In this document: piece by piece, positions 27,701 through 48,183 of the stretch
Position numbering within the stretch: the stretch's first letter is position 1
Layout of the letters: each line of letters opens with the position of its first letter
Source: Adineta vaga
Taxonomy: Eukaryota > Animalia > Rotifera
NCBI GenBank assembly: GCA_021613535.1
Contig: CP075497.1
Span: forward strand, 13,640,001-13,704,000
Length of the DNA: 64,000 nt
Direction of reading: 5' to 3'
The notes under the pieces: generated by a model
The model's database searches: none
Told to the model about the DNA's origin: nothing
The model's input: the letters and a program-made list of their open reading frames with translations, nothing else
Translations under genes and position numbers: made by a program

Positions 27701-30700
27701 CAACGATATCAAATTCAATAAAGCGATTGTTCTGTCAATCTTTTTCTCAAAAACAAACGTCTTTCTACTCTAAAGACAGGATGATATTTTTCCTTTTCAT
27801 TCAGACGTTAGAATCTTTCTAATATGAACATGTTTTACAATATTTTTATTTCTTTTTTATCTCCTTTCCCTACCATACTAAGTTGGTTGCAAAAACACAA
27901 TTCATTACTAATAGTACTGTCGAGATAAAAGTATTACTTTTTGGATCATATTATCATTTGCTCTTTCAATTCATTCTTTTATGTATTCTCGTCTTATCAT
28001 GACTGTTTTTTATGTTCATACCAACTCCTCTCTTATACAAGCTATATAATTTATACACCGAGTGCATTGTGAATGTGAATTAGTGAACACATAATGCTAT
28101 CAAGAACGTTAATAAAACTGCTAGTTCAGTTCGTCGTTCCAAATACAACAATCATAATTCTATAATGACTATTTAGGACGGTTTTCTTAAGATTCTTTGA
28201 AGGCAAGAAAGTTTCGTGGAAGAGAAAAACATTCCAGAAAACACACTTTAATCTATTTTTGTTCATTATTAAAACAATGAACTCATAACTTTATCCTTTA
28301 AAATTAAATCTTCCTAGGTGAGCAAGTTCTTGGAAAAACAATTCAACCATTCTGTAATTATTTACCATCGGCATGTCAAATCATAAACATGTTCGCACCA
28401 GCTGAATGCACAATATCTGCCCTGTATCATATTATTATTGTGGAAAATCAAAATATTCACACTTTACCATCCATCATTCCACTTGGTAGACCATTACCAG
28501 GTCGCTACGCGTTCGTATTTGATGATTTTCAACAACAAATTGTACCTGATGGAAAAGCTATAGGTGAGCTGTATCTCGGTGGTATAGGAATTTTTAAGGG
28601 CTACTTCAATAGACGCGATGAAACGAAACAAGTTCTTCTCAAACTACCTGTTTGCGAAGATTCCGTTTATGAAACGGGCGATTTGGCTAAAATCTCTGAA
28701 GATGGTGACATTATCTTTGTGGGACGAAAAGATTTCCAAGTGAAATTGCGAGGTCAACGCATCGAGCTAGGTGAGATAGAAAATGTTTTACTACATGCAA
28801 CATTACATATCATCAACACTGTTGTCTTAAAAATCACATATAATTTCGAGGATCATCTTGTCGCTTATATACAGTCACAACAGTGCATAACAAAACATTA
28901 TTTGCGACAATACTGTTTTTCCCATTTACCTAACTATGCTGTGCCATCGTTCTTCATAATACTTAATAAATTACCTTTAAACACGAATGGAAAATTGAAT
29001 CGAAAAGCTCTTCCATTACCCGATTTCACTCTTCTATCAACAATTACACATGATAACGATCAACCAAAAACAAATATCGAACAATGTATACATTCCATTT
29101 GGTGTCACGTTCTTCCACATCTTACATCGATTTCAGTTTCACAAAATTTCTTTTCTTTGGGTGGTAATTCATTATCTTTGATGAAACTTCATCATTTATA
29201 TCAAATAGAATTTAAACATAATCTCAATATGAGTGAACTTTTTCGTTATCCTACTATTCGTGATCATGCTCGATTATTTCTCGAACAAAAACATTCATCT
29301 TTAACAGATAACATACAATGGCAATCGCTTCATCTCAATGAAGGTAATTCAAAAATATGAAAAAGAAAAACTAATCTTCTTTCTGTTGATATTCTCATAG
29401 GTCCTGCATCATTTGCTCAAACACGTATCTATCTAGACGAACAAATTCATTTTGCATCTTCATCAACAGCTATCTATCATATGCCCTTTGCTCTTGAAAT
29501 AGATCAACATTGTTCTCTTTCCTTCGAAAGACTACAAAGAGCAGTAAGAGCTTTAGTTGAGAAACATCAAGTGTTGCGAACAAAACTTACATTCAATGAA
29601 AATGATGATGTATTACGACAATGTGTACTTCATTCATTTGATATACCGTTTGTTGAATCGACAATATCTTTCGATGATAAAGAGGCACTTAATCAAATCC
29701 TTTTCAGTGAGGAAACGCATCCATCATTATTTGATTATAATCAAGGTCATGTGTTCCGATGTCACATTGTTCGTAGAGATTTAGATAATAAAAATCACGA
29801 TCTATTAACATCTGGTGACATAATTATCTTCAATTTTCATCATATAGCTTTCGATGCCTACTCCATTCCAATATTCTTTCAAGATCTGCAACATGCTTAT
29901 TCAACTAATTGTACTCTCGAATCATCATCATCATCTTCTTCTTCTTCTTCTTCTTTCAATTATATTGATTATGCTATACATGAACGTGAAATTGATTTTA
30001 GTGAAATGAAAGAGTTTTGGCATGAACATTTGCTTGGTTATTCAGATCATATTCTTCCATTACCATATGATCGATATCCATTGAATAAAACACGATCTGG
30101 TCGTGGCATAACAATCAATTTTGAGTTATCAGCAAAATTAGTTGATCAAATGTACAAATTTGCTGTTGAACATGAATTAACTCTCTTTCAACTTGGATTA
30201 GCTTCTTTCTATACTTATCTATTTAAACTTACTCAACAAACAGATTTGTATGTGAATTGTGTGTTTGCAAACAGAAATCGTCATGAAATTCAGGATATTA
30301 TTGGATTCTTCGTCAATACACTCCCACATCATATGAATGTGGATCCCTTTCAATCATTTGAAGCATTTGTAATGTGTGTGAAGCAGCTTTCATTGATGAT
30401 CATGTCTAATAGCCGACTGCCTTATCAGGATATTATTGGTGGTCAAAGCACTCAAATAATGTTTCTATCTGATAGTGATAGTGACAATGACAGGAGTCAC
30501 TTTAGGCTTGATAATAATAATACTCTTCATGTACTTTCGAGAGAAGAAAGTGATGTAGCAAAATTTGACCTGACATGTGCATGGTATGAAAATGTCAACG
30601 ATCGAACCGTTAATATTTCACTGAATGGCTCATCTGATCTGTTTGATAGATTGTCACTTTCAATGATGTATGATCGATTCGAACAAATGCTTGAGCAATT

Positions 30701-33700
30701 ATTTAAGTTGTCTTCTTTGTGTGAGGCTTCATTGATATTATCCAATGAGAGGAAATTATTGACTGAAATAAGTTATGGTCCTGAACTAAGGTGTGGCAAT
30801 GAATGGCAACCTATTCATCATACATTTGTGTTACGAGCTGACGAATATCCGCAGAAAATAGCGGTAATTCTTGATGAACAGTGTCTTACCTATGGTGAAC
30901 TTCTCAATCAAAGTCAACAGTTTGCTGTGTATTTGATAGATATGTGCGATGTAAAAGAGCAAGATATAGTGGTGCAATGTGTTGAGCGTAGTATCGAGAT
31001 GGTGATTGGAATTATGGCTATAATGATAGCTGGTGCTGTGTACTGTCCGATAGCGGCTGATCAGCCTTTTCGAAGAATAGTCGCACTTATCGAACAGATT
31101 CCTCCTGCATGTATTATTGTTGATCGACTACATCAATATAATTTAGGAAGAGGAATATGCGTACATGATGCTATCGTAGAACCCAATCATACTGTTAGTA
31201 ATTCAAGTCGGTTGAGCTCTATTAAACCTGGTAGTATAGCGTATATTATTTTCACAAGTGGTTCAACAGGTGTGCCGAAAGTGGTCTCTATTAGTCATCA
31301 AAATTTTTGTTTTGCTCTGGAATCGATGAAACAGGTAGTTATTTATTCTGGGAATGATACTGTGTTGCAAATGAGTTCATGTGCATTCGACATTCATGCT
31401 CAGGAGTTGATTGGTAGCTTGGTAGTAGGTGCCACACTTGTTATGCTCCACCCACACGGTAACTTAGACATGAAGTATGTTGTGAGAACAATAATGGATT
31501 TCCAAATTAGTTTTGCTCAATGGGTGCCAACAACGACAGCAGTTCTTTGCGAATATTTGAACAATGAATATGTACCTTTTGTCAAGTGTCTTTCTACTCT
31601 TCGCTGCATCTGTACAGGAGGTAAGGCGCTTTTTTCTCTGTTAGAAATATTCATTTAATTTTATCTAGGTGAACAAGTACGTAGTAAAACTCTCACATCC
31701 TTACTTCCTTATTTGCCGTCTAAGTGTAAGATTTTAAGCATGTACGGCCCTGCAGAATGTGCAATCGCTGCTTTGTTCTACCCGTTGGAAGATATTGCAT
31801 CAGTAGGTGTAGTCTTACCACTTGGCCGATGTCTTCCTGGGCGGCACGTAGCAATACTGGATGATTACAGTCAAGACGTCATTCCAGATGGGCGGGCTAT
31901 TGGTGAAATATATCTTGGTGGTATTGGGGTTTTCTCAGGTTATCGAAACCGTGTGGAAGAAAATATACATGTACTAGTGCAGTTACAAGGTCGTCAAGGC
32001 ATCTTCTATAGAACTGGTGATCTAGCAATAATTAATACGCAATGTGAAATTCTTTTTGTCGGTAGAAAAGATTATCAAATAAAACTACGAGGACAGCGTA
32101 TTGATTTAAATGAAGTTGAATTTGTTATAATGAAACACGCGTCAAATTGTATTGTAGTGAAAGCAACACATGCTAATGCAGAGCATTTAGTGGCTTATGT
32201 GGAGACAACACAATATGATTATAATTGGCACAATTATTGTTCAACACATCTTCCGTTATATATGGTACCTACTTTATTTATAGTTCTGGACAAATTACCA
32301 ACTAATCAAAATGGAAAAATTGATCGAAATCAATTACCTACTCCGAATTTTAGTTTATTTTCATCGTCGATGAATGAGGAGAGAGAGTTATGTACAGAAA
32401 TGGAACATCGTGTCTGTTCGATTTGGTGTAGTTTATTATCACACGTTGAGTCTATCTCCAAAAATGAATCTTTCTTTTCGGTCGGAGGCAATTCATTGCT
32501 ATTGATCAAATTGTATCATATGTATCAGACAACATTTTCTTTCTGTACCAATACATTGACTATTAGTGAATTCTTTCTCCGTTCGACAGTCGCTGAGCAT
32601 GCTAGTCTTCTAACAGAACATGCCACTGTTCAGAATGAAGTATTAAATAATAGTTGGAAATCAATCAACATTATTGAAGGTTAGTAGAATTCTAGAGTGA
32701 ATCCATGAGGACCTATCCACTTACGTGTCAATCTAAAGCGATTGCAGTTGAAGCAGTTAACGCGGTACACTGATATAGAGGAATACCGCTATATCCCAGC
32801 ATTAAGAATACTTGTGTACTTAGCATAGCTAGTTAGTTTGAATTGATGACGACTAGAAACCGAGGTCTTTCTCGTTTGTTGTTCAACGTTTTTCGCTTCT
32901 AGCTTTCATATACTTGTCCTTACAATCTGGTACTCCATTTTATTCAAGAAAGTTGACATTAACACTAGGAATATATTTTGTTGAATCTTCTTGCTGTTTC
33001 AAATTATTGTTCTTTTGAGAGCTCATAGAAAAATACGTGTGAGAGCTGCATATTCACGCATTGATCTCACTTACATCCTCAGGAAACATGATTCTAGACT
33101 TGTTTTATATTTTGTAACGCAAGAAACTGCTCCAAAACTCGGGCATTTCAATACGAAGTATTTGATATTTTTCATCAAACGTATTCTCCAGACGATATAG
33201 GCATTCTGAAGTGAAAAACAATCGAGAAAAACCTTTTGAAAAAATGGATAAGTCCTTATGGATTCACCCTCTATACAATGAACTAAAATATTGAAGAATA
33301 TCTTCATTAAGGAATCGCTTCATTTGCACAAACACGTATCTATCTCGACGAGCATGTTAGATTCGCTGAGCAGAAAACAATCAGCAAGACAGCTGTCTAT
33401 CATATGCCCTTCGCATTTGATATTAACGAAGGATCCAGTGTGTCATTGAGTCGACTTCGTCGTTCGCTTGGCTCTGTCCTGAACAAACATGCTTCACTTC
33501 GAACTCGAGTCACATTAGACGAGAACGAAACAGGCATCGTGCGTCAAAAAGTATTGGATTTGTTCGAACTGCCAATTTTAGTATCTTTACAAATTAACAA
33601 TGAGCAGTATCTTGAAGAAATTCTGCACGATGAGATGACCAACTCAGATATCTTCAATATCGAGCAAGGACATGTATTTCGTTGCCACATTGTACGACGA

Positions 33701-36700
33701 AACTCGATAAAAAGTTATGAAGATGATCTCCTGCCAGGTGACATTGTAATTTTCAATTTCCATCATATTTCGTTCGATGGAGTGTCACTCTATGTTTTTC
33801 TTCAAGACCTACAACGGGCCTATACAACGGACTCAGAATTGGAGTTCACATCTCTTCAGTATATCGATTATTCAGTATATGAGCATCAATTAAATATGGA
33901 GGAATCAAACATTTTTTGGCACAATCATTTAAACGATTTTACCAACAGCAATGTATTTATTCTTCCTTGTGATCGATATCCTCGAGATTTGAACATGCGT
34001 TCAGGTCGTGGTACAACCGTACACTTCGAGCTGAGCAAGTCATTATCCGACAAGATATTTAGCACTGCGGAGCAATACAAACTTACATTATTTCAAATAG
34101 GACTTGCCAGTTTCTATGTTTTCCTTTTTAAACTGACTGAACAGACAGATCTATGCACATTATCTGTTAATGCGAATCGCTATCGACCCGAACTCGAAGA
34201 TATGATCGGATTTTTCGTTAATACTCTTCCTTATCGTATTAAAATTGATCCAATGTTATGTTTCTTCAGATTCATGCAAGAAGTTCAAGCTCAATGTCTT
34301 GCCATTTTACCTCATTGTCATGTACCATATCAAGATATTATTGCCAATAATTTCCTCAGTCAAACATTATTTGCAGTTGAACAAATCGATGGACCAAAAA
34401 GCGTAGATTTTTATGAATTGAGCGATAATGCAACTCTTCGCTCGCTAGTATTGAAAAATCAGGATACCAGCGCTAAATTTGATTTATCTTGCGACTTCAG
34501 TTACTCTATTCAAGGTCCTTCAATCATCGTCTCACTCAATGCTTCACTCGATCTCTTCGATCAAACAACGATCGAAAAGATGGCTAGACGTTTTGAATTT
34601 CTTTTTGATAATATATTTCCTTCCAAACATTTGTATGAAACATCATTACTTTTTGATGATGATCAGAAATTTTTACACCATTTCAACAATCTTTATGCCA
34701 ACAATGACAATATAGATTGTATTCATCATGAGATTATTCGTCAGGCTGACAAATCTCCTCAAATGATCGCTATAATTCTTGAAAATCAAACATTATCATA
34801 TGGTGAACTACTCTATTTTGCACAACAGTTAGGTTCTCATCTTGTTATTAATAACGGCGTAGGACTAGGGCATGTAGTGTGTCAACTATTAGAACGGAGT
34901 ATTGAAACAGTTATTGGTATTCTTGCAATATGGATGATTGGCGGAGTTTATGCTCCATTAAATTCTCGTGACCCAGAAGCAAGACTTAAAACTTGTCTTG
35001 CGATGACCCACACTCGATGTATCCTTGCTCATTTTGCTACGCGTAATATTATTTCTGATCCTTGTTATCTTGTTGTTGAAATTGACCAGATCCTCTATCA
35101 CTCTCACTCTACCAATAATGAATTATGCAGTATTAATGTTATACCCGAACATTTGTCTCATATAGTTTTTACTAGTGGATCAACAGGAACACCAAAAGCA
35201 GTGAGTTAATTAAAGCTAATTCATTTGTCTTGTACATAAAAACCTCTTTAATAGGTGCAACTTCGTCATCGAAACTTTGTCTCTTATATTCATTCATATA
35301 TCATTCAACCAAATGAAATTACTCTGCATCATACAGCGGTTACATTCGATGCTCACTTGGAAGAAATTGTTGGCCCACTCATTAAGGGCGGTCAAGTGAT
35401 TATACTTCCGCCAGATGCTCATCTTGATATGAATATTTTATCAACAACAATTATGCGGCATCAAGTCACTTATTTAGGAGGAGTACCTACTCAATTGACT
35501 TTATTGGAAAAATTTATAAAAACATGCAATAGCGACTGCTTGATGACACTTCGTACTATTTCATCTGGAGGTATATTTATTTTATCAAAAATATTCACCT
35601 AGTGAAATCTTTCTGTGGCTTTGTTTTAAAACATAGGTGAGTCGCTATTGACTAGCACAGTACAAAATCTTCTACCATATTTGAACACAACCTGTCAATT
35701 CTACAACTGTTATGGTCCTGCTGAGTGCACGGAAGGTGCAATCCAATATTTAGTCAGAAAAGATGAACTTATTTTTAACACTGTTGTACCCATTGGTCAA
35801 CCCATGTTGCATGTTCAAGTTCATCTGCTCGATGATTATCTTCAACCAACCATACCAAGCATACAAATCGGAGAAATTTTCATCGGAGGTAAATTGAATT
35901 TGTGACAATTGATAAAATCTAAACGTGAACAAAATACACCGAATAGCACGCTAAAATATCGAAAGATTTCTGTTATAGATTATCGTTCTTCATTTTCGTA
36001 TATATGCACAGTTGTTTGCAAAAAACTTAGAAAAATGTTTTTTTCAGCTATTACCCAGGCAGACAATAAACGGTCAGAACTACGTTTAAACAGTTTACAA
36101 TACCGTTTTCGCTGTTTTCACAGTTATAAACGGTTTTACCTTTGCGCTTATCACTCTTGAACCGTTTTAACACTTTATCGTACAGGTAGTTCGAAAATTA
36201 ACGGTGAGAAACGCTCTATTTTCGTTATTTCTTGATAAAAAACGTTTTAGTAAGTCTGCTAATACAAATGTATATTTTATAAACATATATACATCATGTA
36301 ACTGATATGTTCTTACTAAAGTTTATCTATAATTTCCAGAAGTTATAGATACTATTAGGTAGTAACTTCCGAATAGTAAGTGCAACCATTATGTAACTTG
36401 TATGGTTTAAAAGCATAATAATAAAGTATTTTCATATGATAAAGACTAGATTATGCCTCCTGTCAAGTTATGAAACGCTGCTATCAGCTGTTCGGAATCA
36501 ACAGAAAAAAATATTCAACAACTTGTATTAATATGAACATGGTTGATAAAAAAAAAGATAGAAAACGCAAACATGTCTCAGAGCGTAAGAAGTGTATTCA
36601 AATGAAGATATTTTCTAACAGCCGTATATCTGTAGATAGGCAGATGTAAAATAAGATAGCAATTTCATTAGAATATTTTTGTAATGATTATGTAATGATT

Positions 36701-39700
36701 TTCGAAGAACAATCCATTGTGTGTTTATGAGAATATATAAGCTTGTGAGAAATAGATGAAGAAATTTGTTGTATATCTTTTTCTGAGAATGAATATTTAG
36801 TAGAGTAAAATAAACGAACTATTTTCAATACTGAACTTAACGTTGAATAAAAAGAAACAGAATAGTTAATAGATCAAATCATGTACTTTCTGAAAAATTT
36901 GGATAACGATAAAAATAGTATTCAGTTGGTGTCGATACTTCACGAACACCAAAAGACAAGTTTTTCTTTAATTTGTTGTGGCTTGATCATGATAAATTGA
37001 TGTGATTGACAAAAGTGACCTTCCAGCACATTAGTACACTGATACAATACATTGTCAATATTGATGATATCTGCAATAGATGTTACTTTAATTTGTTCGA
37101 TGAGTAGCAAAACATTATCTTGTTCTACATTGAGTAATTTTATTGCACATCTAAAAAAACCCACCCGCAGATTCTTCGTATTGTAGGAATCATGGTACAG
37201 AATACATCCATCGTGTGTTCGACTTTTGTTAGGAAGTTTTTTATAAGAATATCGTAAACCATTGTAGAAAACTGTACGATATAATTCATATTCTTGATTC
37301 CGTAAATATTTTTCGACAAACAGTGATGATGGGATACGTTGATGGAAACGAATGTTAGAAGAAGAACTTTTAATAAAACGTGGACGAGCTTGCTTCGATG
37401 AAGAGTTGATCTGGTTTATAAATAATTTAAATGAATATAAAAAATTGTCGTGATCAAGAAAAATCCAACTGCGATGTAGTAATTCCAGATTATAGCAAAT
37501 TTCAGTTGATGGTTGACTTGGATCACGAAGTGTTCGAACAAGTGTACCTTCAAATTATGATAGTGAAAATAAATTTGACTTCTCTTTTTACTAGATAATG
37601 ACCAGTATCTCAGTATTGTGCGCAAAGTTTTGTATCAATCTTTCTTACAAATGTATAAGGCATATAAACATACCAATGAGTGATTCAAAATTGAAGGTCG
37701 AATAGTTCATTAGAGGACCATATTCACGTACAGATGACGCAACATGAACAACTGAGTGTACAACAGATACGATGTGTCGTTTTTAAAAGAGTTTTATTTT
37801 CATGTTAAGGTAGTATGTCATTATATTCATTAAGATCTTACTCTATAGAGTGGTCGGAATCGTTGTATAAAATATTTGAGTAGTACATCAATTGTCGTCA
37901 TCATTTTATCATCAATACATTTTGCCTCTGCTAAATGAAGAGCAAAAGCTAATGCTCGTAAATCCTTGTATTGATTACAATTCAATGCAGTTCGAAAGCA
38001 ACTTTGCAAATATATTTAAAAATAATTTTGTTAACACAAAGTCCAAGAAACACATACTTGTAGCCCATTAAAAGGCACAACCGTAATTCATTTGCTTTAA
38101 ATTGACAAAAGTGACGTAGACGTTGAGGTACTCGATAAGTTGATGTTGGAAAATGAATAGAATCAAATGCTACTTCTACTTGTTCTCTACGATCGAAAAT
38201 ACTCATACTGTTTGTAGTATTTCTTCTGAACGATGGTGGCTCCAACCATATTTTAAGTAGTTTTAGCTATAATAGACAAATAGCACCAACATAAAATCAA
38301 TTTGTATTAAGAAGAAATACGTATCTAAAACTTTAATTAGATTGAAGTTTTTAAACAACAGAAAAAATATATTTTATTGAAATAAGGCAAACGTTTTGAT
38401 ACAATATAAAATAGTATTTGAAACGAAACTTATGAACTTGCTCTACATATTTTTCTGAAAATGTAAGAACAAGACTATCAATAAGTTCTTTTGATAAAGT
38501 CTTAAAGCTTTTGTACACAAAAATAGTTAATACCGAAGAAACTTACGAATAATCCGGCATATAGATTATGAAGTGAATCCGTCAAAAACGAATGTCCCAT
38601 ATCGAAAAATCTAAGTCTTCTTAACAAACATGGGCCAACATATCCTTTTGCTCCATCAGTATGCACACTTGTAAGAGAATTCCGTCCTGCACGTTGCTTT
38701 TTATTCTATCATATAATAAAACCCAAAATAGCGAATTAAAAGACAAATTCAATTACATACCTTCGTCAGGTTTTCATTGCTTGATCATAACTTGTGTTTG
38801 AACGAGGTTCGAGTAGATTTGTTAGGTTGGGTGGAAAGCAACGTATAAAGCCTTTTCCTGCAGGTACACTTTCACCTTGAATTGTGAAACAGTTATATCT
38901 GTTGAACACAAAACTTTTAAGCAATTTTTATCTTACCAACTATATGACAATTGGTACATCCATAGAAGCCTACACTGTCAATCGTATTTTGAATCATTGA
39001 TTGTGTCGGTTTATCTGCAACAACACCAAGTAAATATACAGCAATACGAGTAGTAACTGAATGTTGGAATGAAGCGGAACTATCTGTTGATGATAAACGA
39101 ACCAACTCATCCACTATGCCATTTAGTAGTGGAGAAAATTCTGCTCGTTTTGGCTTTTGTGATCCATAAGAAATCATTCCGATAATCATATTTGGTAGTT
39201 GAAATCGAAGAGAACGAGGAATTTCATTTATTACCATTGTAGTAATCCATAATGACCGTGAAATTTGTTTAACTAAAACTCCATCTGAATTAAGTGTCAT
39301 TGTAATAAATCGTGTTTCTTCTGATTCTCTAGCCCGTGAATGCGCCGATCCGTCAATAATATCAGTCATTTGATCGAGATTTGTATTAGTAGAGATGAAT
39401 GGAACACGCTGCAAAATAGATTTAATTTGTTTAGAAAGGTTAAATGTGTAATTTACAGTTGGTGCTCTAATATAACATGTATGACTATGACAATCAACGT
39501 GCGGACATTTCCCCATGTTTGTGCTAATTCGACAGCAGGTTGGACAAACAATAGCTAATTTAGGTGCGAATATTGAGTTTCCACGTGGATTAATTATTTC
39601 TTATATTGAACGATAATCTGCAGGAACATTTTGTATACCAAGTAAACGTAATAAATAACAAATATCTGTAATGCAAGATTTGGATAAAGAATGTCGGTGT

Positions 39701-42700
39701 CGAAATAGCGAGAGAAGAACAGCTATTTCTAAAGTACTATGTATACGAAAATGATCTGATTTGATTTTCTCATCTTCCTCGTCTTTGGGATCGTTAATTG
39801 AATTGTCCGATGTTGTTGACGATGATGATGAGGTTGAAAATGATGTTTGACGTTCTCTTTGAGTTGAAACATCTTCATCAAATTGTTAGATGTTAATATC
39901 ACCGAGACTTTCATCATTTTCTTGTTCTTTATCAGAAGCGATTGATAACCAGTCTGTATCGTGATCATCATCATTTGAATTGGTGGAATCAAACGGCGTC
40001 GTATGCTGCTGTACAACATCGATCTCTCCATCAGAAAAATTCGACGGCACTAGAGAAATTTCACTTATAGAAGTAGATGATGATACCTTTTTCTTAACAA
40101 CAGAGGAACCAAATCCCGAGTACAAACTTTGAATGCTGTGGCGATATCGTAAAATATCTTGTGTTGCAGGTGAATTTATTGAAGACGTAAATCATCACAT
40201 TTCTTCAGAAAAAAAGAAATAACTTTTAAACTAACTGATGTCTTTTATCACAATTAACTGTTTCATTTTCTTTTCGGCAATAGTGTTTCGTTGCGAACGA
40301 CGAGAAAAACTCTTCCGAGTAAATGTGTTCGTTTTGATCTTCATATATTTATATTCAATCGACTTGATCTATAGTTTTATCTGCAGAACGACAAGCCGTA
40401 TAGTTAAAAAAAGATTTTCTCTATATTTTCATTCAAATATATTTATTGCATATGATTAAAAATCAAATAGTTCTCCTAACACAAGATGTCTTCTCCTTAT
40501 AGTTCATATACAGAACAATCAAGAAAATCTATTAACATTATATAGTTCAGACAAAAACTATAATAAATAGAAATATAAAAGAATCAATTTACAGGTATAT
40601 ATAGACATACATCAGGAGAAAAAGAAATGTAAAATAACTATCGTCAGAAAACAATTAAAATTTACAAAGTCATATAACGAAAACTATGAAAATAAATCTA
40701 TATTTCAACAAAAAAAGACTTATATTTGAATAACTACACAGCTAATATTGTATATAATTTAAATATGAACATACTATTCTTCGTCCATTCGATCGAAATC
40801 ACGACCAAATTGACTATTTGAGTGATTATCGTGTAAATCTTCTAAATATGTTTCCATCGTGGAGCTGCTGTTCTGAGATCTTAATTCATTCTCATTTTCA
40901 TTGTTCATATGTGGATTATTAGCATCAACTAAATTTAATTCCACATTCAAGAATTTGTTAATGTGATGTTTTCCTTGTCGTATCGATCCACCAATTGCTT
41001 CACGCATTCTTCTTTGGTAAACATAACCGGTGGATTACATTGACGCGGGAAACCTAAAAGAGAAAACAAAATAATATCTATTCATATTGATGATTCATAC
41101 CTCTACATACATAACACTAACATATATAGATCCTATCACTGCAAATGTTTAGAAATTCGCCTATTTCTATTTTCCAACTGTAAATACTTCTATCGACAAC
41201 AATATAAGTCTAGTCAAAGTATTCTTGTTATTTTTATTTAAGTCATTCTTCCAATAGAATATATTGATTAATACACTTCCGTGGCGACAATGATTTTCTT
41301 TTTCTTTCTGTCATATCGTCCGACGGAACAATGAGACGAAAGAAAAAAATATTTCGTCTTCTTTCTTTCTTTCTTTCTTTCTTTTCCTTCAAATCGATTA
41401 TTAATTCTATGACAATCGATCATTTCAATTTTATCCTCCCTCCTGATCATTTGAACTGATTTTCTCCTACGCTCCCACTTCCCTACCAAGTCGTCCTGTT
41501 CAAAACAATTCGAGGTAAGTGATAAATAATACTTACAGAAAATATCGTTAAGTAGATGTGGTTCTGCTTTAGCAAACTTCTTGATACTAATTAGTTTAGC
41601 ACGTTCATGATGTGTTGAGAATAATTTGTTAAATACGGCTGAAGCAGCTCGTTGTAGATTAAGATGACGACATTCTATCAATTCTTCTTCAGACACACCT
41701 ATTGCTTTTGCAAGTTGAGGAAAAGTTTTCGTATGAATTGAACTATTTGTATTTGTTAAGTTTTCCACCAGTTCGAGTAGAAAGGTTAAGCCATCCACAG
41801 ATGGACGTGCTACATAAACATATTATTATTACAAGAGAAATATTTGAGAATACATACGAAATGAACATGCACGATAACTATCAAATTCGGCTCGTAGTTT
41901 CATATAATCATCACGCCATGCCTTACATCGCTCAACTTCTTGATCGAGTGCTTTTCTCAGTTGTATGTATTCAGGTATAGTTTCAAGTAATGCTAAATTC
42001 GAAAAAGCAGAGCAAATCGTAAGATGTTTTGTGGATTTTCCACTAGACGAAATAGATTGAGTATTAGTGGTCGATCGAGAATTATCCCTAGAAAAGAAAT
42101 CTAGATTGTGTAACACAGATAAGAGAAATATTTACTTTTGCGCTGTAGATTTATTTCGTTTAATATTAAGTAATTGTCGATTACTAGGAGATTGAAGACA
42201 ACTAGAAAGAGTAAGAAATTTTAGTCAAAGAGGAAAGGAATATCAATAGATATTGTATCTTCTATCTTTCATTTATATAGATAGAAGAAGTGAACGGATA
42301 AGGCAGTGAATACATAGTAGAATATCTGACATGTTTTCTGAGAATTATTTTACCGGTTAGCAGATTCTCGCATAATTGATGGTGATGATAAGTGTTCTCT
42401 TACACGAGGTTCAGATCGACTAAGAATGAAACCTGTAATATGCCGAAATATTCTTAGATGAGAAACTTACGAATAATTAGAAATTTTAGTTCGACTTGAT
42501 GTAGGAATGATTGTTGGTAATGATAGTTGTGCAAGATGCGCTTCATTTGTTGTATCTAGAACAATTGATTCATTCCCATCATCCATTTCTGTTGCGTCAC
42601 AAGCATTGCTTGAATGAATTTGTGAAACAATCGGACTACAAGTCGAAATCACAGCTTCTAATGTTTCATATGCACGTTGTGTACGAACATCAGCATAAGT

Positions 42701-45700
42701 AGTCGTTGAATTCTTATGAATAACTGATGAGTTGAGTGGACGACTTTGTTTATTTGCGTTCGAGTTAGAAATGCCATTTTTCTTCGGACTGGATTTGGTA
42801 TCTAAAATACGAATGGTTTTTCACCGTTTAAAATCTATTACCATATTACCCTGCAAAGATTCTTCCTGACAGTCAACTAATAATGAATCTTTTTCCAATG
42901 AACTTTCTTCACTCGTATCACTTAGATTAATCCGTGTAGCAGTGTTTGAATGTGTATTTGGTTTGCCTTTTAAGATAGTCGTTGATCGTTTTGTTACTGA
43001 AGTTTGAGGGGTTTTTTTTGTTATAATTGAACTGTTCGGTCGTCTACGTTTTGAAGCTGCACGAGTTAAAGTCATTTGCACGAAAAATGAATATTAAGAA
43101 GAAAATTCACGATTTGTGCAAGTAAATAATGCAAAAGTAAACTTTCGCTAGCAGATGAAATAGAAATTATTATTGATTGCCTAATCAGTGAACTATTTAT
43201 AGTGTTGAAATCATAAACCAAGACGGACGATTAGGATGAAGCGTAAGCACCCCTTTTTATTGATTTTCACTTAGTACATATCAAATATAGCAGTGATGCC
43301 TCGAATTGAATGTGTCTTTTCTTTTTCGTCCGCCTATTCGGTTAATGATATATAGACAAGAACGGAAGAAGATACGTATATATATATCTAGGTGTATTAG
43401 CTGAATTCCTCGAGGGTACGACTGTTTTGATAGTACCTTTCTTTACAGTCGTCATTCTATTCTTATAATACTAATAGACTATAACAAATGGCTTGTTAAA
43501 AATCATTCTTAGCAACAATGCCGCATTTTCGTGAAACTATATGAACAACAATAAAAAACAAGCCATTGTGTAATTAATATATGAGAATTAAATAAAATCA
43601 TACGAGGAATATGTTTAATAATGAAAAGATAACTAGAGAAAGTTGTAGGTAACATATGAAGAAACTTGTTATTGAAATGGTGAAATCTATTTACATAACA
43701 TTCGTTTTTTCAGTACGCGGTGAAACGTTTTTAATATTTTTGAGGGTCAACTTCTCGAAAGATGCACTAGAATTTCTATATATGGAAGTGCGACTTTTTT
43801 CCTTTTCGATATTTTCATATGCCAATTAAAACGACATGAAATTATACCGTTGTATACTACTCGTCGTGGGCTATCTGCCACACTATAAAGCAATTCGAAG
43901 AACAAGTGTATAGAAGCAGATATTTGAGTAAGAAAGTTTCTAAGTTTTTTTTGCAAACAACTATACATGAGGTGAGTATTATCTCTTCACAGCAACGCTA
44001 CGATAAAGAACGAAGCTGTTTTTTAATTATTTTTCATTTTTGCTTGTGAATCAAGACAGCGAAACTGAACTTTTCATTGTTTAGATTAATTTGATTATGA
44101 TTGACAAAAAAATAGACCATGTAATTCCACTTAAAATTACGTTTCAGTTATAGAGTGAGGCAAATGTTATATAATTTCGTTTGTTTTTTTATTATTCAGA
44201 AAACTGATCCTATGATTCTAGTAGTACAAATCAATAAAAAAGAGCATATAAAAGGGTAAAATGATCATAATGAAGATAAAGAGGAATGCATATACACAAG
44301 CAGCAAATATTGATAAAATACCATGTAATAACACCTGAAAATGTGCTTTTATACGTTTTCAAAAAACGAAAAAATTTATCGTAAAAGCTAGAAATTTGCA
44401 AATATTATTATGCTTAAAGTCTCAAGTTTTCCACAAAAAACGTACATTTAAAGGTATTATCACATGTCTTTTTTATCGATTTATTGTTCTAGGTAGAAGC
44501 ATTGGAATATGCCCAGATAAAAAGTTTAATTTGTCGGATGGACAGATTCTGAAATTTTCTGAGCAACTGAATTTTACCAATTTCATAATTAGGAGCAACA
44601 GAACTAGCTAGTATAAAACTCAACTAAGTAACAATTTTTTGAATTACAGATTGATTACATATGAATCTTTTAGATCTTCTCAAACATTTTCTTGAAATGT
44701 TTCCTTCGATCCAACGCTATCTGAGCGCATTCAGATTGAGTTTTTCGAATAATGATATTGCATCGTTCAAGTTAGCAAGACTAATTAGATACGTTTTCTC
44801 AATAGAAAGAGCAGTAATCTCCAAATAACTTTTGATCTAGGTTAGATAGAATAAGGTAGCCGAAATATTTATACTTCCGAGCTCAATTGAATTTTTCTCA
44901 GAATCATAATTAAAATCAGTGTCAGACTAACGATAAGTAATTTCGCAGACACTTACTAAGGTTTTAACTTTATTCAAATTAAGACATTGAAAAGAGTGCT
45001 GAATTTCTTTTTGACTAGCGGCAGTTTCAGCTACATTATCAGCGAAAAATTGATAAATAAAATAGAGGTTAAAACACTAACTTGTGGACCACCTTTCTCA
45101 AAGTAGACAATCGAGATATTTTACTAACTTGCTAAGTTCTGTCAAACGAACATGAATTTAAATATATCGAATAGAACTGTATAAAAAATATTTGTTCAGA
45201 CTATCTGTTGCGATCACGAAATGTTCTTTGACATATATTTAATTTGTAGGTGCTGGTGTTTTTGCCGGTTATTGTAATGAATTCGATGATCATGACAGTG
45301 CAAAAGTTCTCTTTATGTTTGACAAGCAAATATTTTACCGTACAGGCGATTTTGCAAAGCTAAATGTGCAAAGTAAACTGCTCGAGTTTAAAGGACGTCG
45401 AGATTATCAAGTGAAATTGAGAGGACAAAGGATTGATTTGGGAGAAATAGAATCAACTATACTGGCTGCAACTCCCTTTGTTCAAAATTGTGTTGTTATG
45501 AAGCAGGAAGCACAAGATGCATACGACAATGATGCATTTTTAGTTGCTTATCTAACGGCACATCAGAATTCAGTTGATGACAAAGATAAACTTTGCGAAC
45601 AAATTGCTTTTTATTGCCAACAACATCTACCAACATATATGGTTCCTTTAAGGTGGTCCTTTCTGGATTCATTCCCAACGAATCAAAATGGAAAAATAGA

Positions 45701-48070
45701 TCGAAAATTATTACCTTATGTAAAACGCACTCCTTATCAAAAGATCGTCAGTCAACCGACAACATCTCTAGAAAGACAGCTTAGACAGATATTTAGCAAA
45801 GCATTTTCCATCGAGTCAGATGTTATTGATGTTACTCTTTCATTTGAACAACTTGGTGGTACATCCCTCGGAATAATACGCGCTCTTTCGCTAATTCAAC
45901 ACAGCGTGTACAAGCATATGGACATACATTTACTTTTAACTAATCCATCTGTTCGGCAGTTAGGTATGAAAATCGAATCTCTTCTTTATCTACATGATAA
46001 CGAATTACATGAAATGATAGAATATGATGATTCATCTTTATATCTTCAGCCTTCATTATTTATCGAAGCATTTGCTATGCTTCTTCTAATGATTTTGTGG
46101 ATATTTCCCGTATGGATTGCCTACACATCGATGTTACCGATAGTTATGATTGTTCTTTTTATTGTCTCATTTCATTTGTTCACATATACGATACTGGTGC
46201 ATATTCTGAAACCATTCGTTAAAGAACAAGACCAAGAACTTTTCTCCTTCTCTTATTATGCATGGTGGTTTCTTAGTCGATTGTGGACATTAAACAGCAC
46301 TTTTTGGCTTTGTTCTTTAGTTGGGACACCCTTCTATAATGCTTATCTACGAATGTGTGGTGCCCATATTGGCAACAATGTGCATATTTACACAGTATTA
46401 ATAGATGCTCCATGGCTTATTGATATAAGTGAAGAAACTTTTATTGGCGAGGAAGTCTATTTCAATCATATATCGTATCAAAATAAAACTTTTGAACTAC
46501 GTAGAATTTTGATCGGCCGTTCGTGTTTCATAGGGGCGTACAGTGTTCTCTACGAAGGTGCAGCAATGAGAGATGGATCTTTTGTAGAATCCTATTCCGC
46601 TGTCAAAGGCAATTTTATTGGTTCTGATGTGCAGTATACATCATGTTCATATCGGCCTACTTGGGTTTTAATCTTTCAATTTCTGTCGCTTCTGGCTGTA
46701 ACAACAGTTTACGCTATGTCACTTAAAATCGTTTTCGCTATACATGTACCTATGATTCCATTACTTTTATCTGTTCCCCTTCGTTTTCTTCTATGGATTC
46801 TCTTATCAGCCACTATTGCTTTACTGGCACTTAAATTTGTTGCTGGAAAAATAGAATTTGGTAACTATAGTTTTTATTCATGGAGTTATTTACGTTGTCT
46901 CTGGTTTCGTCGACTAATTATTTCATTTTTCTATTATCCGCTTTCGCAAATAGTGTGCGGCTATCAACGTTTCTCTCTCGTGATACTCTCCTGGCTAGGT
47001 ATGGATATTCGAGGAACCAATATAGAGATTGCTGATGTTATTCCGTTTCTCCTTTATCCTTCTCATCTTGTTTCAATTGACGATGATGTCACGACTTTCG
47101 GAGGTGTACATTTACTTCCTTTTTATATTAATACGAATGGCCAATGTGTTGTTGATAGCATAAAGCTAGGAAGAGGCGTAACTCTTGGTAATCATTGTTT
47201 AATTCATCCTGGCGTTCATCTTCCGTCTGGTACACTGGTGGCTACATTAACAAGAGTAACTCAAAATACTGAATGTGCCGACGGAAAAGTACTCCTTGGA
47301 TTACCTGCTCGTTCAATGCCATTCATTCAGCCGTCTTCTATTAGTAATTCGTATTCAACTACCAGCAGATTTACTGTTTTCAAAGCAGTAGTTCTGGAAA
47401 TTATTGCTAACACAATACCTTTACTCATTGTATCTAGTATTCAACTTGAATCTATGAAGAACTATTTTTTCATCATATTGTTTATGTTTGTATTGATCTA
47501 TTCTATTTTGGTTTGCGGACTCAATCGGTATTGTGTACAAACAAAACCAGGAGCGTATTCATTCGAAGAAACAACAAGTAATTGGTGTCATGTACTTATT
47601 GTAAAAATGACAATCAATTGGACAAACCTTCTCGAACCATTCCTAGGTGGCACTCAGTGGCTCATCTTTTTGGCAAGAGGTCTTGGTGTTCGAATCAAAG
47701 GTTCTGATGTAATTTTATCTTCCTTATCTAACGTCACAGATTATCATCTGATCACAATTGGCGAACATGTACGCATGCATAACAGAGCCATTTTACAGGT
47801 AAGTCGTTTTGAAATAATTTTGATACATCATACTTTTGTGAATAATTGAAGTGCCACACATTCGAACAACGTGTTTATAAATTAGCTCCAATCATTGTTG
47901 GTCCAAGGTCGATCATTAAATCAACATCATTCATTCTGCCTGGTGCTAAACTGGATGGTGCTAACGTTATTGAACCGTTGACATTGATCATGAAGGAAGA
48001 ACATCTACGTGAAGGTATTCATTATTATGGAAATCCTGCTCGAACTCAACCGGGCAATATCACTTATTGA
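2733..48070 (+). CDS. Giant spliced multimodular NRPS, 5'-truncated by the window: A(half)-T-[C-A-T]x6-Pls/PosA-like terminal domain
   Basis: Exons inferred from GT-AG sites: 2733-3748, 3806-5394, 5443-6058, 11512-12528, 12586-14228, 14292-14565, 15354-15696, 15753-16165, 16518-17124, 17182-19403, 19460-20479, 20537-22762, 28318-29343, 29401-31620, 31669-32679, 33312-35200, 35255-35570, 35637-35888, 45250-47798, 47852-48070. All exon phases agree after three 1-nt corrections (~2829, ~13140, ~19148), giving ~7,490 codons. Motifs seen: SFAQTRIY and HHxxxD[G/A] (C); TSGSTGxPK, YGPAE, TGD, QVKLRGQR, NGK (A); LGG[N/T]SL (T). Confidence 0.88.
3806..12528 (+). CDS. NRPS module 1 (C-A-T), split by 48-nt and 5.45-kb introns
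   Basis: GPASFAQTRIYLDE, FHHAAFDG, IGFFVNTLP, LTYAEL, FTSGSTSTPK, SFDIHMQE, CSIG|E (intron 6059-11511), YGPAE, GGNSL. Confidence 0.88.
8842..9963. mobile_element. hAT-like non-autonomous element (duplicate of 58-1181)
   Basis: Same termini and flanks as 58-1181. Confidence 0.6.
10700..11068. mobile_element. MITE, duplicate of 1921-2289
   Basis: Same TIRs and ACCTAACC TSD. Confidence 0.8.
12586..17124 (+). CDS. NRPS module 2 (C-A-T), four internal introns, 1-nt frameshift near 13140
   Basis: FHHIAFDA, LTYGE, LTSGSTGQPKA|VQIRHKNF, FDVHVEE, SAG|E, YGPAET, YKTGD, DYQ|VKLHGQR, NGKIDRK, GGNSL. Confidence 0.85.
14621..15284. mobile_element. hAT-like MITE in an NRPS intron
   Basis: TIR cagagcccgaaac / gttttgggctcta; perfect 8-bp TSD GTTTTCAT at 14613-14620 and 15285-15292. 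Confidence 0.8.
16199..16411. mobile_element. Possible short MITE (MULE-like 9-bp TSD)
   Basis: Direct repeat AAATATCAA at 16190-16198 and 16412-16420; only weak terminal inverted similarity (cgggctttg / catagtccg). Confidence 0.35.
17182..20479 (+). CDS. NRPS module 3 (C-A-T), 1-nt frameshift near 19148
   Basis: FHHIAFDA, FTSGSTGMPKG, FDVHAFE, TGG|E (intron 19404-19459), YSPAE, IKFRGQR, NGKIDRK, GGNSL. Confidence 0.85.
20537..29343 (+). CDS. NRPS module 4 (C-A-T), split by a 5.55-kb intron
   Basis: FHHIAFDA, FTSGSTGMPKA, FDVHAME, TGG|E (intron 22763-28317), FAPAE, TGDL, QVKLRGQRIELGEIE, GGNSL. Confidence 0.88.
22931..23359. mobile_element. MITE with CAAGGG terminus, 8-bp TSD and internal degenerate repeats
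   Basis: Termini caagggaaaaac / gttcccccctta; TSD AACTGGAT at 22923-22930 and 23360-23367; internal GTACTC..GGATTC units in both orientations. Confidence 0.75.
25695..27586. mobile_element. Old hAT-like non-autonomous element hosting the maT transposon
   Basis: Termini cagggttgccgg / ctgacagtcccg (degenerate); flanks gttgcaac/gttataag (5/8 match). Confidence 0.3.
26155..27463 (+). mobile_element. Tc1/mariner DD37D (maT-type) transposon, inactive
   Basis: 36-bp perfect TIR acgggtggcccataaagaatgatagtcttagtattt and TA TSD. Transposase 26316-27337 has stops (26334, ~26694), a frameshift near 26890 and the first catalytic Asp mutated (FSVEK). QQDGAKPH...NPLDY spacing is 37. Confidence 0.92.
29401..32679 (+). 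CDS. NRPS module 5 (C-A-T)
   Basis: FHHIAFDA, FTSGSTGVPK, FDIHAQE, TGG|E (intron 31621-31668), YGPAE, YRTGDL, NGKIDR; divergent T domain FFSVGGNSL. Confidence 0.9.
32695..33271. mobile_element. Tc1/mariner-type MITE in the T5/C6 intron
   Basis: TIR gtgaatccatgaggacctatcca / tggataagtccttatggattcac with TA flanks. Removing it leaves a ~53-nt intron like its paralogs. Confidence 0.75.
33312..45990 (+). CDS. NRPS module 6 (C-A-T), split by a 9.36-kb intron
   Basis: GIASFAQTRIY, FHHISFDG, FTSGSTGTPKA|VQLRHRNF, FDAHLEE, SGG|E, YGPAE, IGG|AGVFAGY (intron 35889-45249), YRTGD, NGKIDRK, FEQLGGTSL. Confidence 0.88.
36900..40344 (-). mobile_element. CACTA/EnSpm (CMC)-like transposase, intron-containing and degenerate
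   Basis: Motifs TLNSDGV..SLW..VINEIP..LRF, VVADKP...GFYGCTNC, FLTDSLHNLYAG, FKANELR, HVASSVREYGPLMNYSTFNFESLIG. Candidate terminus CCCAG at 36054 with AAACGGT/ACCGTTT subterminal repeats. Confidence 0.8.
40774..43081 (-). CDS. Second spliced ORF of the CACTA-like element (coiled-coil, possible BEN/TnpA-like accessory protein), probably degenerate
   Basis: Chain of same-strand ORFs joined by GT-AG introns, tandem with the transposase: basic N-terminus, S/T-rich linker, coiled-coil EYIQLRKALDQEVERCK, helical C-terminal domain. Confidence 0.45.
46042..48070 (+). CDS. Pls/PosA-type NRPS terminal domain (hydrophobic segments alternating with three hexapeptide/acyltransferase-like repeats)
   Basis: Hydrophobic helix pairs precede three repeats: GTPFYNAYLRMCGAHIGNNVHI...ILIGRSCFIGAYSVL; WLGMDI...LVSIDDDV...IKLGRGVTLGNHCLIHPG...GLPA; GGTQWLIFLARGLGVRI...LITIGEHV...LQ|CHTFEQRVYK...LTLIMKEE...GNPA. 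This matches my recollection of the TIGR02353/Pls pattern (GTP..LR.LGA.IG, QTHLF.DR.MK, SLVMKGE...G.P). Confidence 0.85.
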
Positions 48071-48183
48071 ACTCTTCATTATCATAATCATTTACTCATT
48101 GACTTATAAACACAATTTTAAGAACATTTTCAACTTCTAAACATTATAGACTTTAATCATTAGAAATAACTAATATTTCTTGG

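What the first reader, a model, noticed from the sequence alone, without database searches (positions are those of the whole stretch)
33312..48070. Multimodular assembly-line NRPS ending in a membrane-bound Pls/PosA-type (poly-amino-acid synthetase) domain
Seen: after at least seven A-T units, the last T domain (LGGTSL, Ser at 45864) is followed in frame by ~670 aa of hydrophobic segments alternating with three hexapeptide/acyltransferase-like repeats. No TE, reductase or terminal C domain is present. Known: this tail defines single-module bacterial enzymes such as epsilon-poly-L-lysine synthetase (A-T-TM/C1-C3), which iteratively ligate one amino acid at the membrane. Inference: a 7+-module C-A-T line fused to this tail, in an animal, would be a hybrid that anchors the synthetase in a membrane. 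It could release the peptide by ligation to an amine acceptor, or polymerise whole oligopeptide blocks into a sequence-defined, possibly antimicrobial or structural, polyamide. I do not know of a characterised enzyme with this architecture.
Basis: partly seen in the sequence, partly recalled or inferred. Interest (0 to 1): 0.93.

Follow-up and report, generated by a model that had tools for sequence, protein, structure and literature searches.

The report
Rotifer NRPS with Pls-type membrane tail

Summary
Window 33312-48070 (+) encodes the last C-A-T module of a large intron-bearing NRPS in Adineta vaga (chromosome 6, subtelomeric). It runs in frame into a ~670-aa tail of three transmembrane-helix pairs alternating with three left-handed beta-helix domains.

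- **Family:** the tail matches TIGR02353 (Pls/PosA) at E 5e-51, but scores 174 bits against a cut-off of 423. Its AlphaFold model overlays bacterial Pls/PosA tails at TM 0.84-0.88 over ~650 residues.
- **Transcription:** RNA-like contigs from three runs skip the 53-nt tail intron. They also carry the end of the exon that lies 9.36 kb upstream, so the tail is spliced to the last A domain.
- **Release domains:** no TE, R or terminal C domain is present.
- **Corrections:** the given coordinates hold one module. The array has 12 T domains and starts 34 kb upstream of the window. Five upstream modules carry small frame-breaking defects that may be assembly errors.
- **Distribution:** about 13 diverged paralogous tails in A. 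vaga mostly sit behind C-domain arrays. Rotaria and A. steineri have them too. No bacterial protein shown had a C domain.

Most likely role: membrane-anchored release by aminolysis. Block polymerisation is untested. The scan noted the same architecture on other DNA of this genome (s1-494342, s1-494399).

The parts
2732..32679 (+). Upstream modules M0 (A C-terminal part and T) and M1-M5 (C-A-T each) of the same array. T domains at 3475, 12255, 16851, 20206, 29070 and 32394. Giant introns at the SSGG|E position in M1 (~6059-11512) and M4 (~22763-28317). Frame-breaking indels at 2829 (M0), 13140 (M2) and 19145 (M3).
   Evidence: tblastn domain map; Pfam; GT..AG junctions; identical T|C linker introns; HHxxxD and GGxS motifs intact; indels against sister copies
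32680..33311 (+). 632-nt phase-1 intron between T5 and C6 (GT at 32680, AG at 33310-33311). It sits at the same position as the ~57-nt linker intron of the other modules.
   Evidence: Sequence read directly. The splice restores ..IIE-G-IASFAQTR, parallel to ..NE-G-PASFAQTR in five other linkers. No RNA evidence was obtained.
33312..35200 (+). Exon: condensation domain C6 (HHISFDG) and the start of adenylation domain A6, through motif A3.
   Evidence: Pfam Condensation 2.5e-52 and AMP-binding 7.9e-25; HHxxxDG
35201..35254 (+). 54-nt GT..AG intron in A6 (PKA|VQ position).
   Evidence: Sequence. M2 has a ~790-nt intron at the same position.
35255..35570 (+). Exon: A6 core with the substrate-pocket residues D235 A236 E239 T278 (FDAHLEE ... 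VPT).
   Evidence: Pfam; alignment to solved A domains; signature comparison
35571..35636 (+). 66-nt GT..AG intron in A6 (SSGG|E position).
   Evidence: Sequence
35637..35888 (+). Exon: A6 motifs A5-A7, ending ..GEIFIG-G.
   Evidence: Pfam AMP-binding. Its last 17 bases are the loose end carried by RNA contigs at 45248.
35889..45249 (+). 9361-nt GT..AG intron inside A6. Mostly unique sequence, not transcribed in the RNA-like runs over the part that was laid (42401-45247).
   Evidence: Splice sites. RNA contigs show zero cover of 42401-45247 and a junction overhang. Few repeats elsewhere in the genome.
38917..39516 (-). Decayed tnp2-type transposase fragment inside the giant intron.
   Evidence: Pfam Transposase_21, E 1.4e-5, below cut-off
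45250..45776 (+). A6 C-terminal subdomain (AMP-binding_C; A10 motif NGKIDRK).
   Evidence: Pfam; motif; RNA contigs start here with the upstream-exon overhang
45777..45962 (+). Carrier (T6) domain. Phosphopantetheine Ser codon at 45864-45866 (LGGTSL).
   Evidence: Pfam PP-binding 4.2e-6
46038..47798 (+). Pls/PosA-type tail, first exon: TM pair 1 (46038-46211), LbH domain C1, TM pair 2 (46659-46853), LbH domain C2, TM pair 3 (47370-47537), and the start of LbH domain C3.
   Evidence: Hydropathy; Hexapep and TIGR02353; AlphaFold pLDDT 86.9; atlas TM 0.84-0.88 to Pls/PosA clusters
47799..47851 (+). 53-nt GT..AG intron, placed just before the conserved CHTFEQR motif.
   Evidence: Skipped in contigs of three RNA-like runs but not in the DNA run. 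An AG acceptor precedes the same motif in all 11 paralogous loci examined.
47852..48070 (+). Last exon: end of C3 with the CHTFEQR motif (bacterial QxHLFEDR), stop TGA at 48068-48070. AATAAA at 48184-48189; RNA contigs end by 48190.
   Evidence: TIGR02353 positions 632-695, E 3.3e-11; sequence

Best explanation
**Shown.** The region is the 3' end of a horizontally acquired NRPS gene of Adineta vaga that has acquired animal-style introns. Its terminal module (C6-A6-T6) continues, in one spliced reading frame, into a divergent Pls/PosA-type terminal domain. That domain has three transmembrane hairpins alternating with three left-handed beta-helix domains, which model as one compact unit. The tail is transcribed and spliced to the A6 exon across a 9.36-kb intron.

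**Inferred.**
- Each hairpin returns the chain to the same side of the membrane. The whole synthetase would therefore hang on the cytosolic face.
- The tail stands where a TE, R or CT domain normally stands. By analogy with Pls and PosA, it would off-load the T6-bound peptidyl thioester by aminolysis. A general base would activate an amine nucleophile that attacks the thioester. The conserved His of the CHTFEQR motif is my candidate for that base.
- In this gene the terminal A domain carries the D235/A236/E239/T278 signature of bacterial Pls-type A domains. The last residue is therefore probably a diamino acid such as Lys or Orn. Its side-chain amine, from the same or another molecule, is the obvious nucleophile. 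The product would be a lactam, an isopeptide-linked dimer or oligomer, or an amide to a free amine.
- The six-helix bundle possibly couples release to export.
For: - **Host:** A. vaga. The 839-aa public model UJR38881.1 equals exons 45498-47798 plus 47852-48067. The genome is 100.8 Mb in 6 contigs.
- **Homology:** TIGR02353 E 4.8e-51 over profile positions 68-695. HMMER against 1.84 billion representatives found bacterial A-T-tail proteins at 20-29% identity.
- **Fold:** AlphaFold pLDDT 86.9, pTM 0.89. TM 0.84-0.88 over 639-651 of 670 residues to Pls/PosA clusters. PDB hits are only LbH acyltransferases.
- **Splicing:** RNA-like contigs of three runs cover only 45248-48190. They skip 47799-47851 and carry a 16-17-nt overhang identical to 35872-35888.
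- **Catalytic motifs:** HHxxxDG, GGxS and A10 are intact.
- **Constraint:** 42 of 82 columns conserved in bacterial tails are retained. CH[TS][FY]E[QH]R is retained in all 11 paralogous loci examined; the intact ones are 34-41% identical overall.
- **Terminal A signature:** DAET, as in 5 of 7 bacterial Pls-type A domains read. Asp217 and Glu221 are essential in PosA (PMC10522769).
- **No other release domain:**
Against: - No biochemical data exist for any bdelloid NRPS.
- The tail scores far below the TIGR02353 cut-off (174 against 423 bits). Half of the bacterial conserved columns have changed, so the chemistry may have changed too.
- Other bdelloid terminal A domains lack the Asp/Glu pair. 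A side-chain amine therefore cannot be the general nucleophile of the family.
- RNA depth is low (3-8). The runs are only guessed to be RNA.
- Only the A6-tail junction was seen. The T5|C6 splice and the upstream modules have no RNA evidence.
- Frame breaks in upstream modules leave the length of the real product open.
Confidence: 0.6

Rival explanations
1. Iterative block polymerisation. The tail repeatedly ligates whole assembly-line peptides through the side-chain amine of the terminal diamino acid. The product is a comb-like or sequence-defined isopeptide polymer, made and extruded at the membrane.
For: Pls and PosA tails polymerise by attack of a free acceptor amine on the T-bound thioester (PMC10522769; PMC8949500). 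This terminal A domain keeps the DAET signature of those enzymes. The whole-domain fold is retained.
Against: Other bdelloid members have non-basic terminal signatures. The acceptor pocket would have to take a bulky acylated Lys. Half of the family-conserved columns have changed. No product is known.
Confidence: 0.12
2. The tail has lost catalysis and serves only as a membrane anchor or export conduit. Release would then occur by hydrolysis or by a separate enzyme.
For: The score is far below the family cut-off. 40 of 82 bacterial conserved columns are not retained. C1 and C2 are more altered than C3.
Against: The CH[TS][FY]E[QH]R motif and other Gly/Asn/Pro/Arg positions are kept across paralogues only 34-41% identical. 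No TE, R or CT domain lies in the gene or nearby.
Confidence: 0.15
3. The locus is a decaying gene. Giant introns, a transposase relic and frameshifts mean that no functional multi-module enzyme is made, and the RNA is residual transcription.
For: There are five frame-breaking defects in upstream modules: an internal A-domain deletion near -31071, a 2-nt indel near -5873, and indels at 2829, 13140 and 19145. Introns of 5.4-9.4 kb occur in a genome whose introns are mostly ~50 nt. A tnp2 fragment lies in one of them. RNA depth is low.
Against: From 19145 to 48070 every exon is open and every junction is canonical. The giant intron is correctly spliced in three runs. 11 of the 14 differences between sister copies are indels, the pattern of long-read consensus errors rather than mutation. 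Catalytic motifs are intact.
Confidence: 0.1
4. The tail is a separate gene, as in the public 839-aa model that starts at Met 45498. It would act in trans or on its own.
For: GenBank annotates it so (UJR38881.1). An ATG-initiated ORF exists.
Against: That model would begin in the middle of an A-domain C-terminal subdomain. RNA contigs of three runs extend 5' of 45498 to the acceptor at 45250 and carry the upstream exon's end. There is no RNA cover in the 2.8 kb of intron before it. The split lands exactly inside the A-domain motif IGG|xGVxxGY.
Confidence: 0.03

Closest known systems
epsilon-poly-L-lysine synthetase Pls (Streptomyces albulus) and other bacterial Pls/PosA-family enzymes (TIGR02353)
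   Same: A terminal domain of ~700 aa placed directly after a T domain. It has six TM helices in three pairs alternating with three LbH domains. The QxHxFExR motif is present in C3. The A domain before it carries the Asp235/Glu239 (DAET) signature. There is no TE.
   Different: The bacterial enzymes are single A-T-tail modules of ~1300 aa. None of the 120 best bacterial proteins listed in the 1040-3307 aa range carries a Condensation domain. Here a C domain and further C-A-T modules precede the terminal module. Identity is only 20-29%, and the score is 174 bits against a 423-bit cut-off.
PosA, delta-poly-L-ornithine synthetase of Acinetobacter baumannii (PMC10522769)
   Same: The modelled tail architecture matches: a helical membrane bundle under three packed left-handed beta-helices. 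The substrate Asp and Glu that are essential in PosA (D217, E221) correspond to D235 and E239 here.
   Different: PosA is a single-module homopolymer synthetase. Position 236 is Met in PosA and Ala here, as in Pls.
Canonical Pls/PosA-type genes of Adineta vaga itself (C1:11.88 Mb and C1:0.88 Mb)
   Same: Same genome, host-like GC, and the same A-T-tail core.
   Different: They score 512 and 508 bits, above the cut-off. No C domain lies within the fetched DNA on their 5' side (about 5.5 kb and 4.7 kb). They nest inside the bacterial clade in a quick tree, while the hybrid tails form a separate long-branched clade.
Bdelloid horizontally acquired NRPS/PKS clusters (Nowell et al. 2024, PMC11258130; Genes 2023, PMC10531068)
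   Same: Subtelomeric position, intron-bearing genes, low basal expression, multi-module C-A-T arrays, module duplication and recombination.
   Different: Neither paper's main text mentions a transmembrane, hexapeptide or Pls-type terminal domain. Their screens used only the A, T and C Pfam domains.
Terminal condensation-like (CT) release domains of fungal NRPSs, and amine-accepting release C domains
   Same: It works like them, by inference. The domain after the last T would release the chain by attack of an amine instead of water.
   Different: The fold is unrelated (LbH pseudo-trimer against the chloramphenicol-acetyltransferase-like C fold), and this domain is membrane-embedded.

Membership tests
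Pls/PosA family terminal domain (TIGR02353 NRPS_term_dom) | Whole-domain HMM score above the curated cut-off (423.1 bits) | tested here: not met
   173.9 bits, E 4.8e-51, on the spliced tail (P0001). A bacterial member scores 523 bits.
Pls/PosA family terminal domain (TIGR02353 NRPS_term_dom) | Six TM helices in three pairs alternating with three soluble LbH (C1-C3) domains, directly after a T domain | tested here: met
   Hydropathy; AlphaFold secondary structure; TM 0.84-0.88 over ~650 residues to Pls/PosA atlas clusters; LbH PDB hits
Pls/PosA family terminal domain (TIGR02353 NRPS_term_dom) | Family-conserved residues retained (for example QxHLFEDR in C3) | tested here: inconclusive
   42 of 82 columns conserved in 16 bacterial tails are retained. 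The C3 His, Glu and Arg are kept in all 11 A. vaga paralogous loci examined. Which residues are catalytic is not known to me.
Pls/PosA-type synthetase (whole enzyme) | Single-module A-T-tail architecture without a condensation domain | tested here: not met
   C6 precedes A6. The assembly shows 11 further T domains upstream on the same strand, joined by conserved linker introns.
Pls/PosA-type synthetase (whole enzyme) | A domain specific for a diamino acid (Asp235 plus Glu239) | tested here: inconclusive
   The signature DAET is identical to 5 of 7 bacterial Pls-type A domains read. This is prediction only, with no assay.
Pls/PosA-type synthetase (whole enzyme) | Iterative synthesis of an isopeptide homopolymer | not testable with these tools
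   Needs product analysis.
Linear (type A) multi-module NRPS | Repeated C-A-T modules with HHxxxDG, A-core motifs and GGxS | tested here: met
   Pfam and motifs. In the assembly, five upstream modules are interrupted by small frame-breaking defects.
Linear (type A) multi-module NRPS | Terminal TE, R or CT release domain | tested here: not met
   None in the tail or downstream. No thioesterase hit near the locus.
Bdelloid horizontally acquired NRPS clade | Encoded in a bdelloid nuclear genome with spliceosomal introns and host-like composition | tested here: met
   A. vaga chromosome 6; GC ~0.32; GT..AG introns, one of them and the giant one confirmed in RNA

The most novel reading that the evidence does not exclude
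The hybrid enzymes are peptide-block polymerases. The Pls-type tail would repeatedly join complete assembly-line peptides through the side-chain amine of a terminal Lys- or Orn-like residue. The result would be membrane-extruded, sequence-defined isopeptide polymers, a class of animal-made material or antimicrobial with no known counterpart.
Probability: 0.1. Interest if true: 0.92.

Novelty: new variant of a known kind. Interest (0 to 1): 0.72.

Why it matters
NRPS chain release is thought to use a small set of domains (TE, R, CT). Pls-type tails are known only as single-module homopolymer makers.

This work shows that a whole gene family in an animal places that membrane domain at the end of multi-module lines, and that it is transcribed. 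That points to a further off-loading strategy, membrane-anchored aminolysis possibly coupled to export.

It also gives a concrete handle on what the large bdelloid-specific NRPS clade makes. That clade has already been linked to defence against fungal pathogens.

Two practical points follow:
- Public annotation cuts the tail off as a separate hypothetical protein.
- Domain screens based only on A, T and C domains miss it.

Tried and rejected
- **TE insertion killing the gene:** rejected. The 9.36-kb gap has exact GT..AG ends inside the IGG|xG motif and is spliced out in RNA.
- **Giant intron as a multi-copy transposon:** not supported. Only three short stretches recur in the genome. The tnp2 hit is a weak relic.
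- **Solved Pls-tail structure:** a sequence search of the PDB found none, only weak LbH acetyltransferases. Foldseek on the whole model gave E > 0.001.
- **Public gene context:** The look-up of encoding contigs on the public tail protein returned nothing.
- **Non-bdelloid multi-module-plus-tail proteins:**
  - No non-bdelloid hit above 2,100 aa appeared among the top 150 of 975 HMMER hits.
  - The 2005-6380 aa word search returned only Adineta.
  - None of the 120 best bacterial Pls/PosA proteins had a C domain.
  - Only the best hits are visible, so rare cases are not excluded.
- **Metagenome contigs L018 and L019:** they show T-C-A-T-tail (GC 0.39-0.41) and fall inside the bdelloid tail clade. 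Their organism could not be named.
- **Hybrid tails derived from A. vaga's own canonical Pls-like genes:** not supported by a quick FastTree.
- **Handling of the spliced model:** exon pieces were searched by reference only. The joined multi-module protein was never built or searched. For the tail I used the public record P0001, which equals the two exons joined.
Full report
**What is there**

The window is Adineta vaga chromosome 6, 13,640,001-13,704,000, about 200 kb from the end of a 13.89-Mb chromosome.
- The genome has 100.8 Mb in 6 contigs.
- The public protein UJR38881.1, 'hypothetical protein [Adineta vaga]', is identical to window exons 45498-47798 plus 47852-48067.

On the + strand, a tblastn map with the window's own C, A, T and tail pieces shows C-A-T modules from 2732 to 48070. 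Pfam confirms Condensation, AMP-binding and PP-binding.

**The tail**

After the last T domain (LGGTSL, Ser codon 45864) the frame continues for about 670 aa.
- Hydropathy gives three blocks of 56-65 aa, two helices each, separated by soluble stretches of 150-170 aa.
- Pfam finds Hexapep/LbH there.
- NCBIfam TIGR02353 (Pls/PosA NRPS_term_dom) matches the main exon (4e-32), the last exon (3e-11, profile positions 632-695) and the spliced public protein (173.9 bits, E 4.8e-51). This is far below the curated 423 bits. A bacterial member scores 523 bits.
- An AlphaFold model built on a 29-sequence alignment is confident (pLDDT 86.9, pTM 0.89). It repeats three times the unit of a TM hairpin, helices and a beta-helix.
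- The model overlays predicted structures of bacterial 'Pls/PosA family' clusters and an ascomycete cluster at TM 0.84-0.88 over 639-651 of 670 residues.
- PDB matches are only LbH acyltransferases. This agrees with the published PosA model of three packed left-handed beta-helices above a six-helix bundle (PMC10522769).
- No TE, R or terminal C domain is in the tail or in the downstream ORFs scanned. None of the genome's 8 thioesterase hits is nearby.

**Gene structure and RNA**

The last module is split by GT..AG introns of 54 nt (35201-35254), 66 nt (35571-35636) and 9361 nt (35889-45249). The giant one falls exactly inside the A-domain motif IGG|xGVxxGY. The tail has a 53-nt intron (47799-47851).

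I laid contigs of four public runs on 42401-48400.
- Three runs of one 2024 study behave as RNA. They have no cover of 42401-45247 and cover 45248-48190.
- All three skip 47799-47851.
- All three carry, before 45248, a 16-17-base overhang identical to the last bases of the exon ending at 35888.
- A 2013 DNA run covers everything without the joints.

The tail is therefore transcribed and spliced to A6. The public 839-aa model, which starts at an internal Met, is truncated. The giant intron holds a weak tnp2-type transposase relic on the minus strand and is otherwise nearly unique in the genome.

**Link to the upstream modules**

The DNA of the T|C linker is identical in five modules. It contains a short phase-1 intron that restores ..NE-G-PASFAQTR. 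Between T5 and C6 the same position carries a 632-nt GT..AG intron (32680-33311), restoring ..IIE-G-IASFAQTR.

The first Met of the exon (33404) would cut off the conserved start of the C domain. This is strong structural evidence for one transcript, but I have no RNA for this junction.

Other A-domain introns sit at shared positions. At the SSGG|E position they are short in M3 and M5 and 5.4-5.5 kb in M1 and M4.

**Size of the array, and a caveat**

With 50 kb of upstream DNA added, the array starts near window coordinate -34352 and holds 12 T domains over about 82 kb. Many modules are near-perfect copies of each other, including 8.78-kb units. Window 1-2725 equals 8785-11504 at 99.8%.

Five modules are interrupted without room for an intron:
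- an internal deletion in the first A domain;
- a 2-nt indel near -5873;
- 1-nt deletions at 2829 (M0) and 19145 (M3);
- a 2-nt microsatellite deletion at 13140 (M2).

Of the 14 differences between sister copies, 11 are indels. That is the pattern of long-read consensus error rather than mutation. I rate the frameshifts as probably artefacts, about 70%, but could not test this. The uninterrupted spliced frame that ends in the tail runs from 19145 to 48070, covering part of A3, T3, M4, M5, M6 and the tail. All C domains keep HHxxxD[GA], and all T domains keep GGxS.

**Distribution**

- *In this genome:* the tail has at least 13 diverged paralogues in A. vaga; the intact ones are 34-41% identical. 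Most lie downstream of same-strand arrays of 3 to 11 C domains.
- *Conserved motif:* all 11 paralogous loci examined keep an intron just before a last exon that starts CH[TS][FY]E[QH]R. This corresponds to the bacterial QxHLFEDR.
- *All-against-all search:* HMMER against 1.84 billion representatives gave 975 hits. The top ~40 that I looked up were Rotaria, A. steineri and A. vaga proteins, of 700-3646 aa. Below them came bacterial A-T-tail proteins of ~1300 aa at 20-29% identity.
- *Already in GenBank:* UJR17611.1 (3646 aa) is a (C-A-T)3-tail protein in one public model.
- *Outside bdelloids:* a length-restricted search for 2005-6380-aa proteins with this tail found only Adineta. None of the 120 best bacterial Pls/PosA proteins of 1040-3307 aa has a Condensation domain, though some have a fused PPTase.
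- *Tree:* bdelloid tails plus one unnamed metagenome protein form one clade with full support (SH-aLRT 100) against 16 bacterial tails.
- *Canonical copies:* A. vaga also has two canonical A-T-tail genes, at 512 and 508 bits. They group inside the bacterial clade.

**Mechanism**

*Established for Pls and PosA.* The tail makes an amide between the T-bound aminoacyl thioester and the side-chain amine of a free acceptor (PMC10522769, PMC8949500).

*Here.* The tail stands where a release domain should be. The most economical reading is membrane-anchored release by aminolysis.

*Terminal A domain.* It carries D235 A236 E239 T278. This DAET signature appears in 5 of 7 bacterial Pls-type A domains that I read. 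Overall, however, this A domain is closer to other bdelloid A domains. A terminal Lys- or Orn-like residue would supply the nucleophile, giving a lactam, an isopeptide dimer or oligomer, or an amide.

*Limit on generality.* Other bdelloid terminal A domains read DIQT, DLY or DVES. The nucleophile therefore cannot always be a side-chain amine of the last residue.

All of this mechanism section is inference.

**Literature**

The two papers on bdelloid NRPSs do not mention a transmembrane, hexapeptide or Pls-type domain in their main text. No paper in the library pairs rotifers with polylysine synthetase, and TIGR02353 appears in none.

Spliced models were searched exon by exon, by reference. The joined multi-module protein was not assembled or searched.

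Noticed in passing
window 1-20421 and 34 kb upstream (G000:C6:13605649-13660421): Module units are duplicated almost perfectly, including 8.78-kb units; 1-2725 equals 8785-11504 at 99.8%. The order of module types is S0,P,Q,R,Q,Q,Q,R,P,S,M5,M6. The T|C linker DNA is identical in five modules. This means either very recent tandem amplification or gene conversion, or an over-expanded assembly.
   Followed up: partly
G000:C1:11880579-11884550 (+) and G000:C1:880858-885343 (-); loci L020, L021: Two canonical single-module A-T-tail Pls/PosA-type genes lie in the A. vaga genome. They score 512 and 508 bits on TIGR02353, above the cut-off, have host-like GC of 0.32, and show a frame change at about 50 nt that looks like an intron. 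No C domain lies within the fetched DNA on their 5' side. They may make a cationic homopolymer in an animal.
   Followed up: partly
G000:C5:2477625-2481709 (locus L022): A third, much more diverged A-plus-tail locus (TIGR02353 fragments of 97 and 77 bits).
   Followed up: no
window 38917-39516 (-): Relic of a tnp2/CACTA-type transposase (Transposase_21, E 1.4e-5) inside the 9.36-kb intron.
   Followed up: partly
L018 (ENA ERZ27296358) and L019 (ENA ERZ926192): Two metagenome contigs (GC 0.39-0.41) encode T-C-A-T-tail with the same frame change inside the A domain. Their tail falls within the bdelloid clade. They probably come from an unsampled rotifer in an environmental sample.
   Followed up: partly
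proteins P0093 and P0163 (Marchantia polymorpha, MpACOS18, 2000-2465 aa): A liverwort protein carries Pls-type tail repeats. The structure atlas also lists a Streptophyta catalase-hexapeptide cluster that resembles part of the tail.
   Followed up: no
proteins P0052, P0173, P0175 and others: Some bacterial Pls/PosA synthetases of 1600-1950 aa carry a fused 4'-phosphopantetheinyl transferase domain (PF01648).
   Followed up: no
window 49201-49704 (-): ORF with NHL repeats (E 1.3e-16) just downstream of the NRPS gene.
   Followed up: no
window 60436-60636 (-) and 61807-62187 (-): A weak A-domain-like fragment and a weak DDE_3 transposase fragment.
   Followed up: no
window 53686-53708: A run of 23 N, the only gap in the window.
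   Followed up: no
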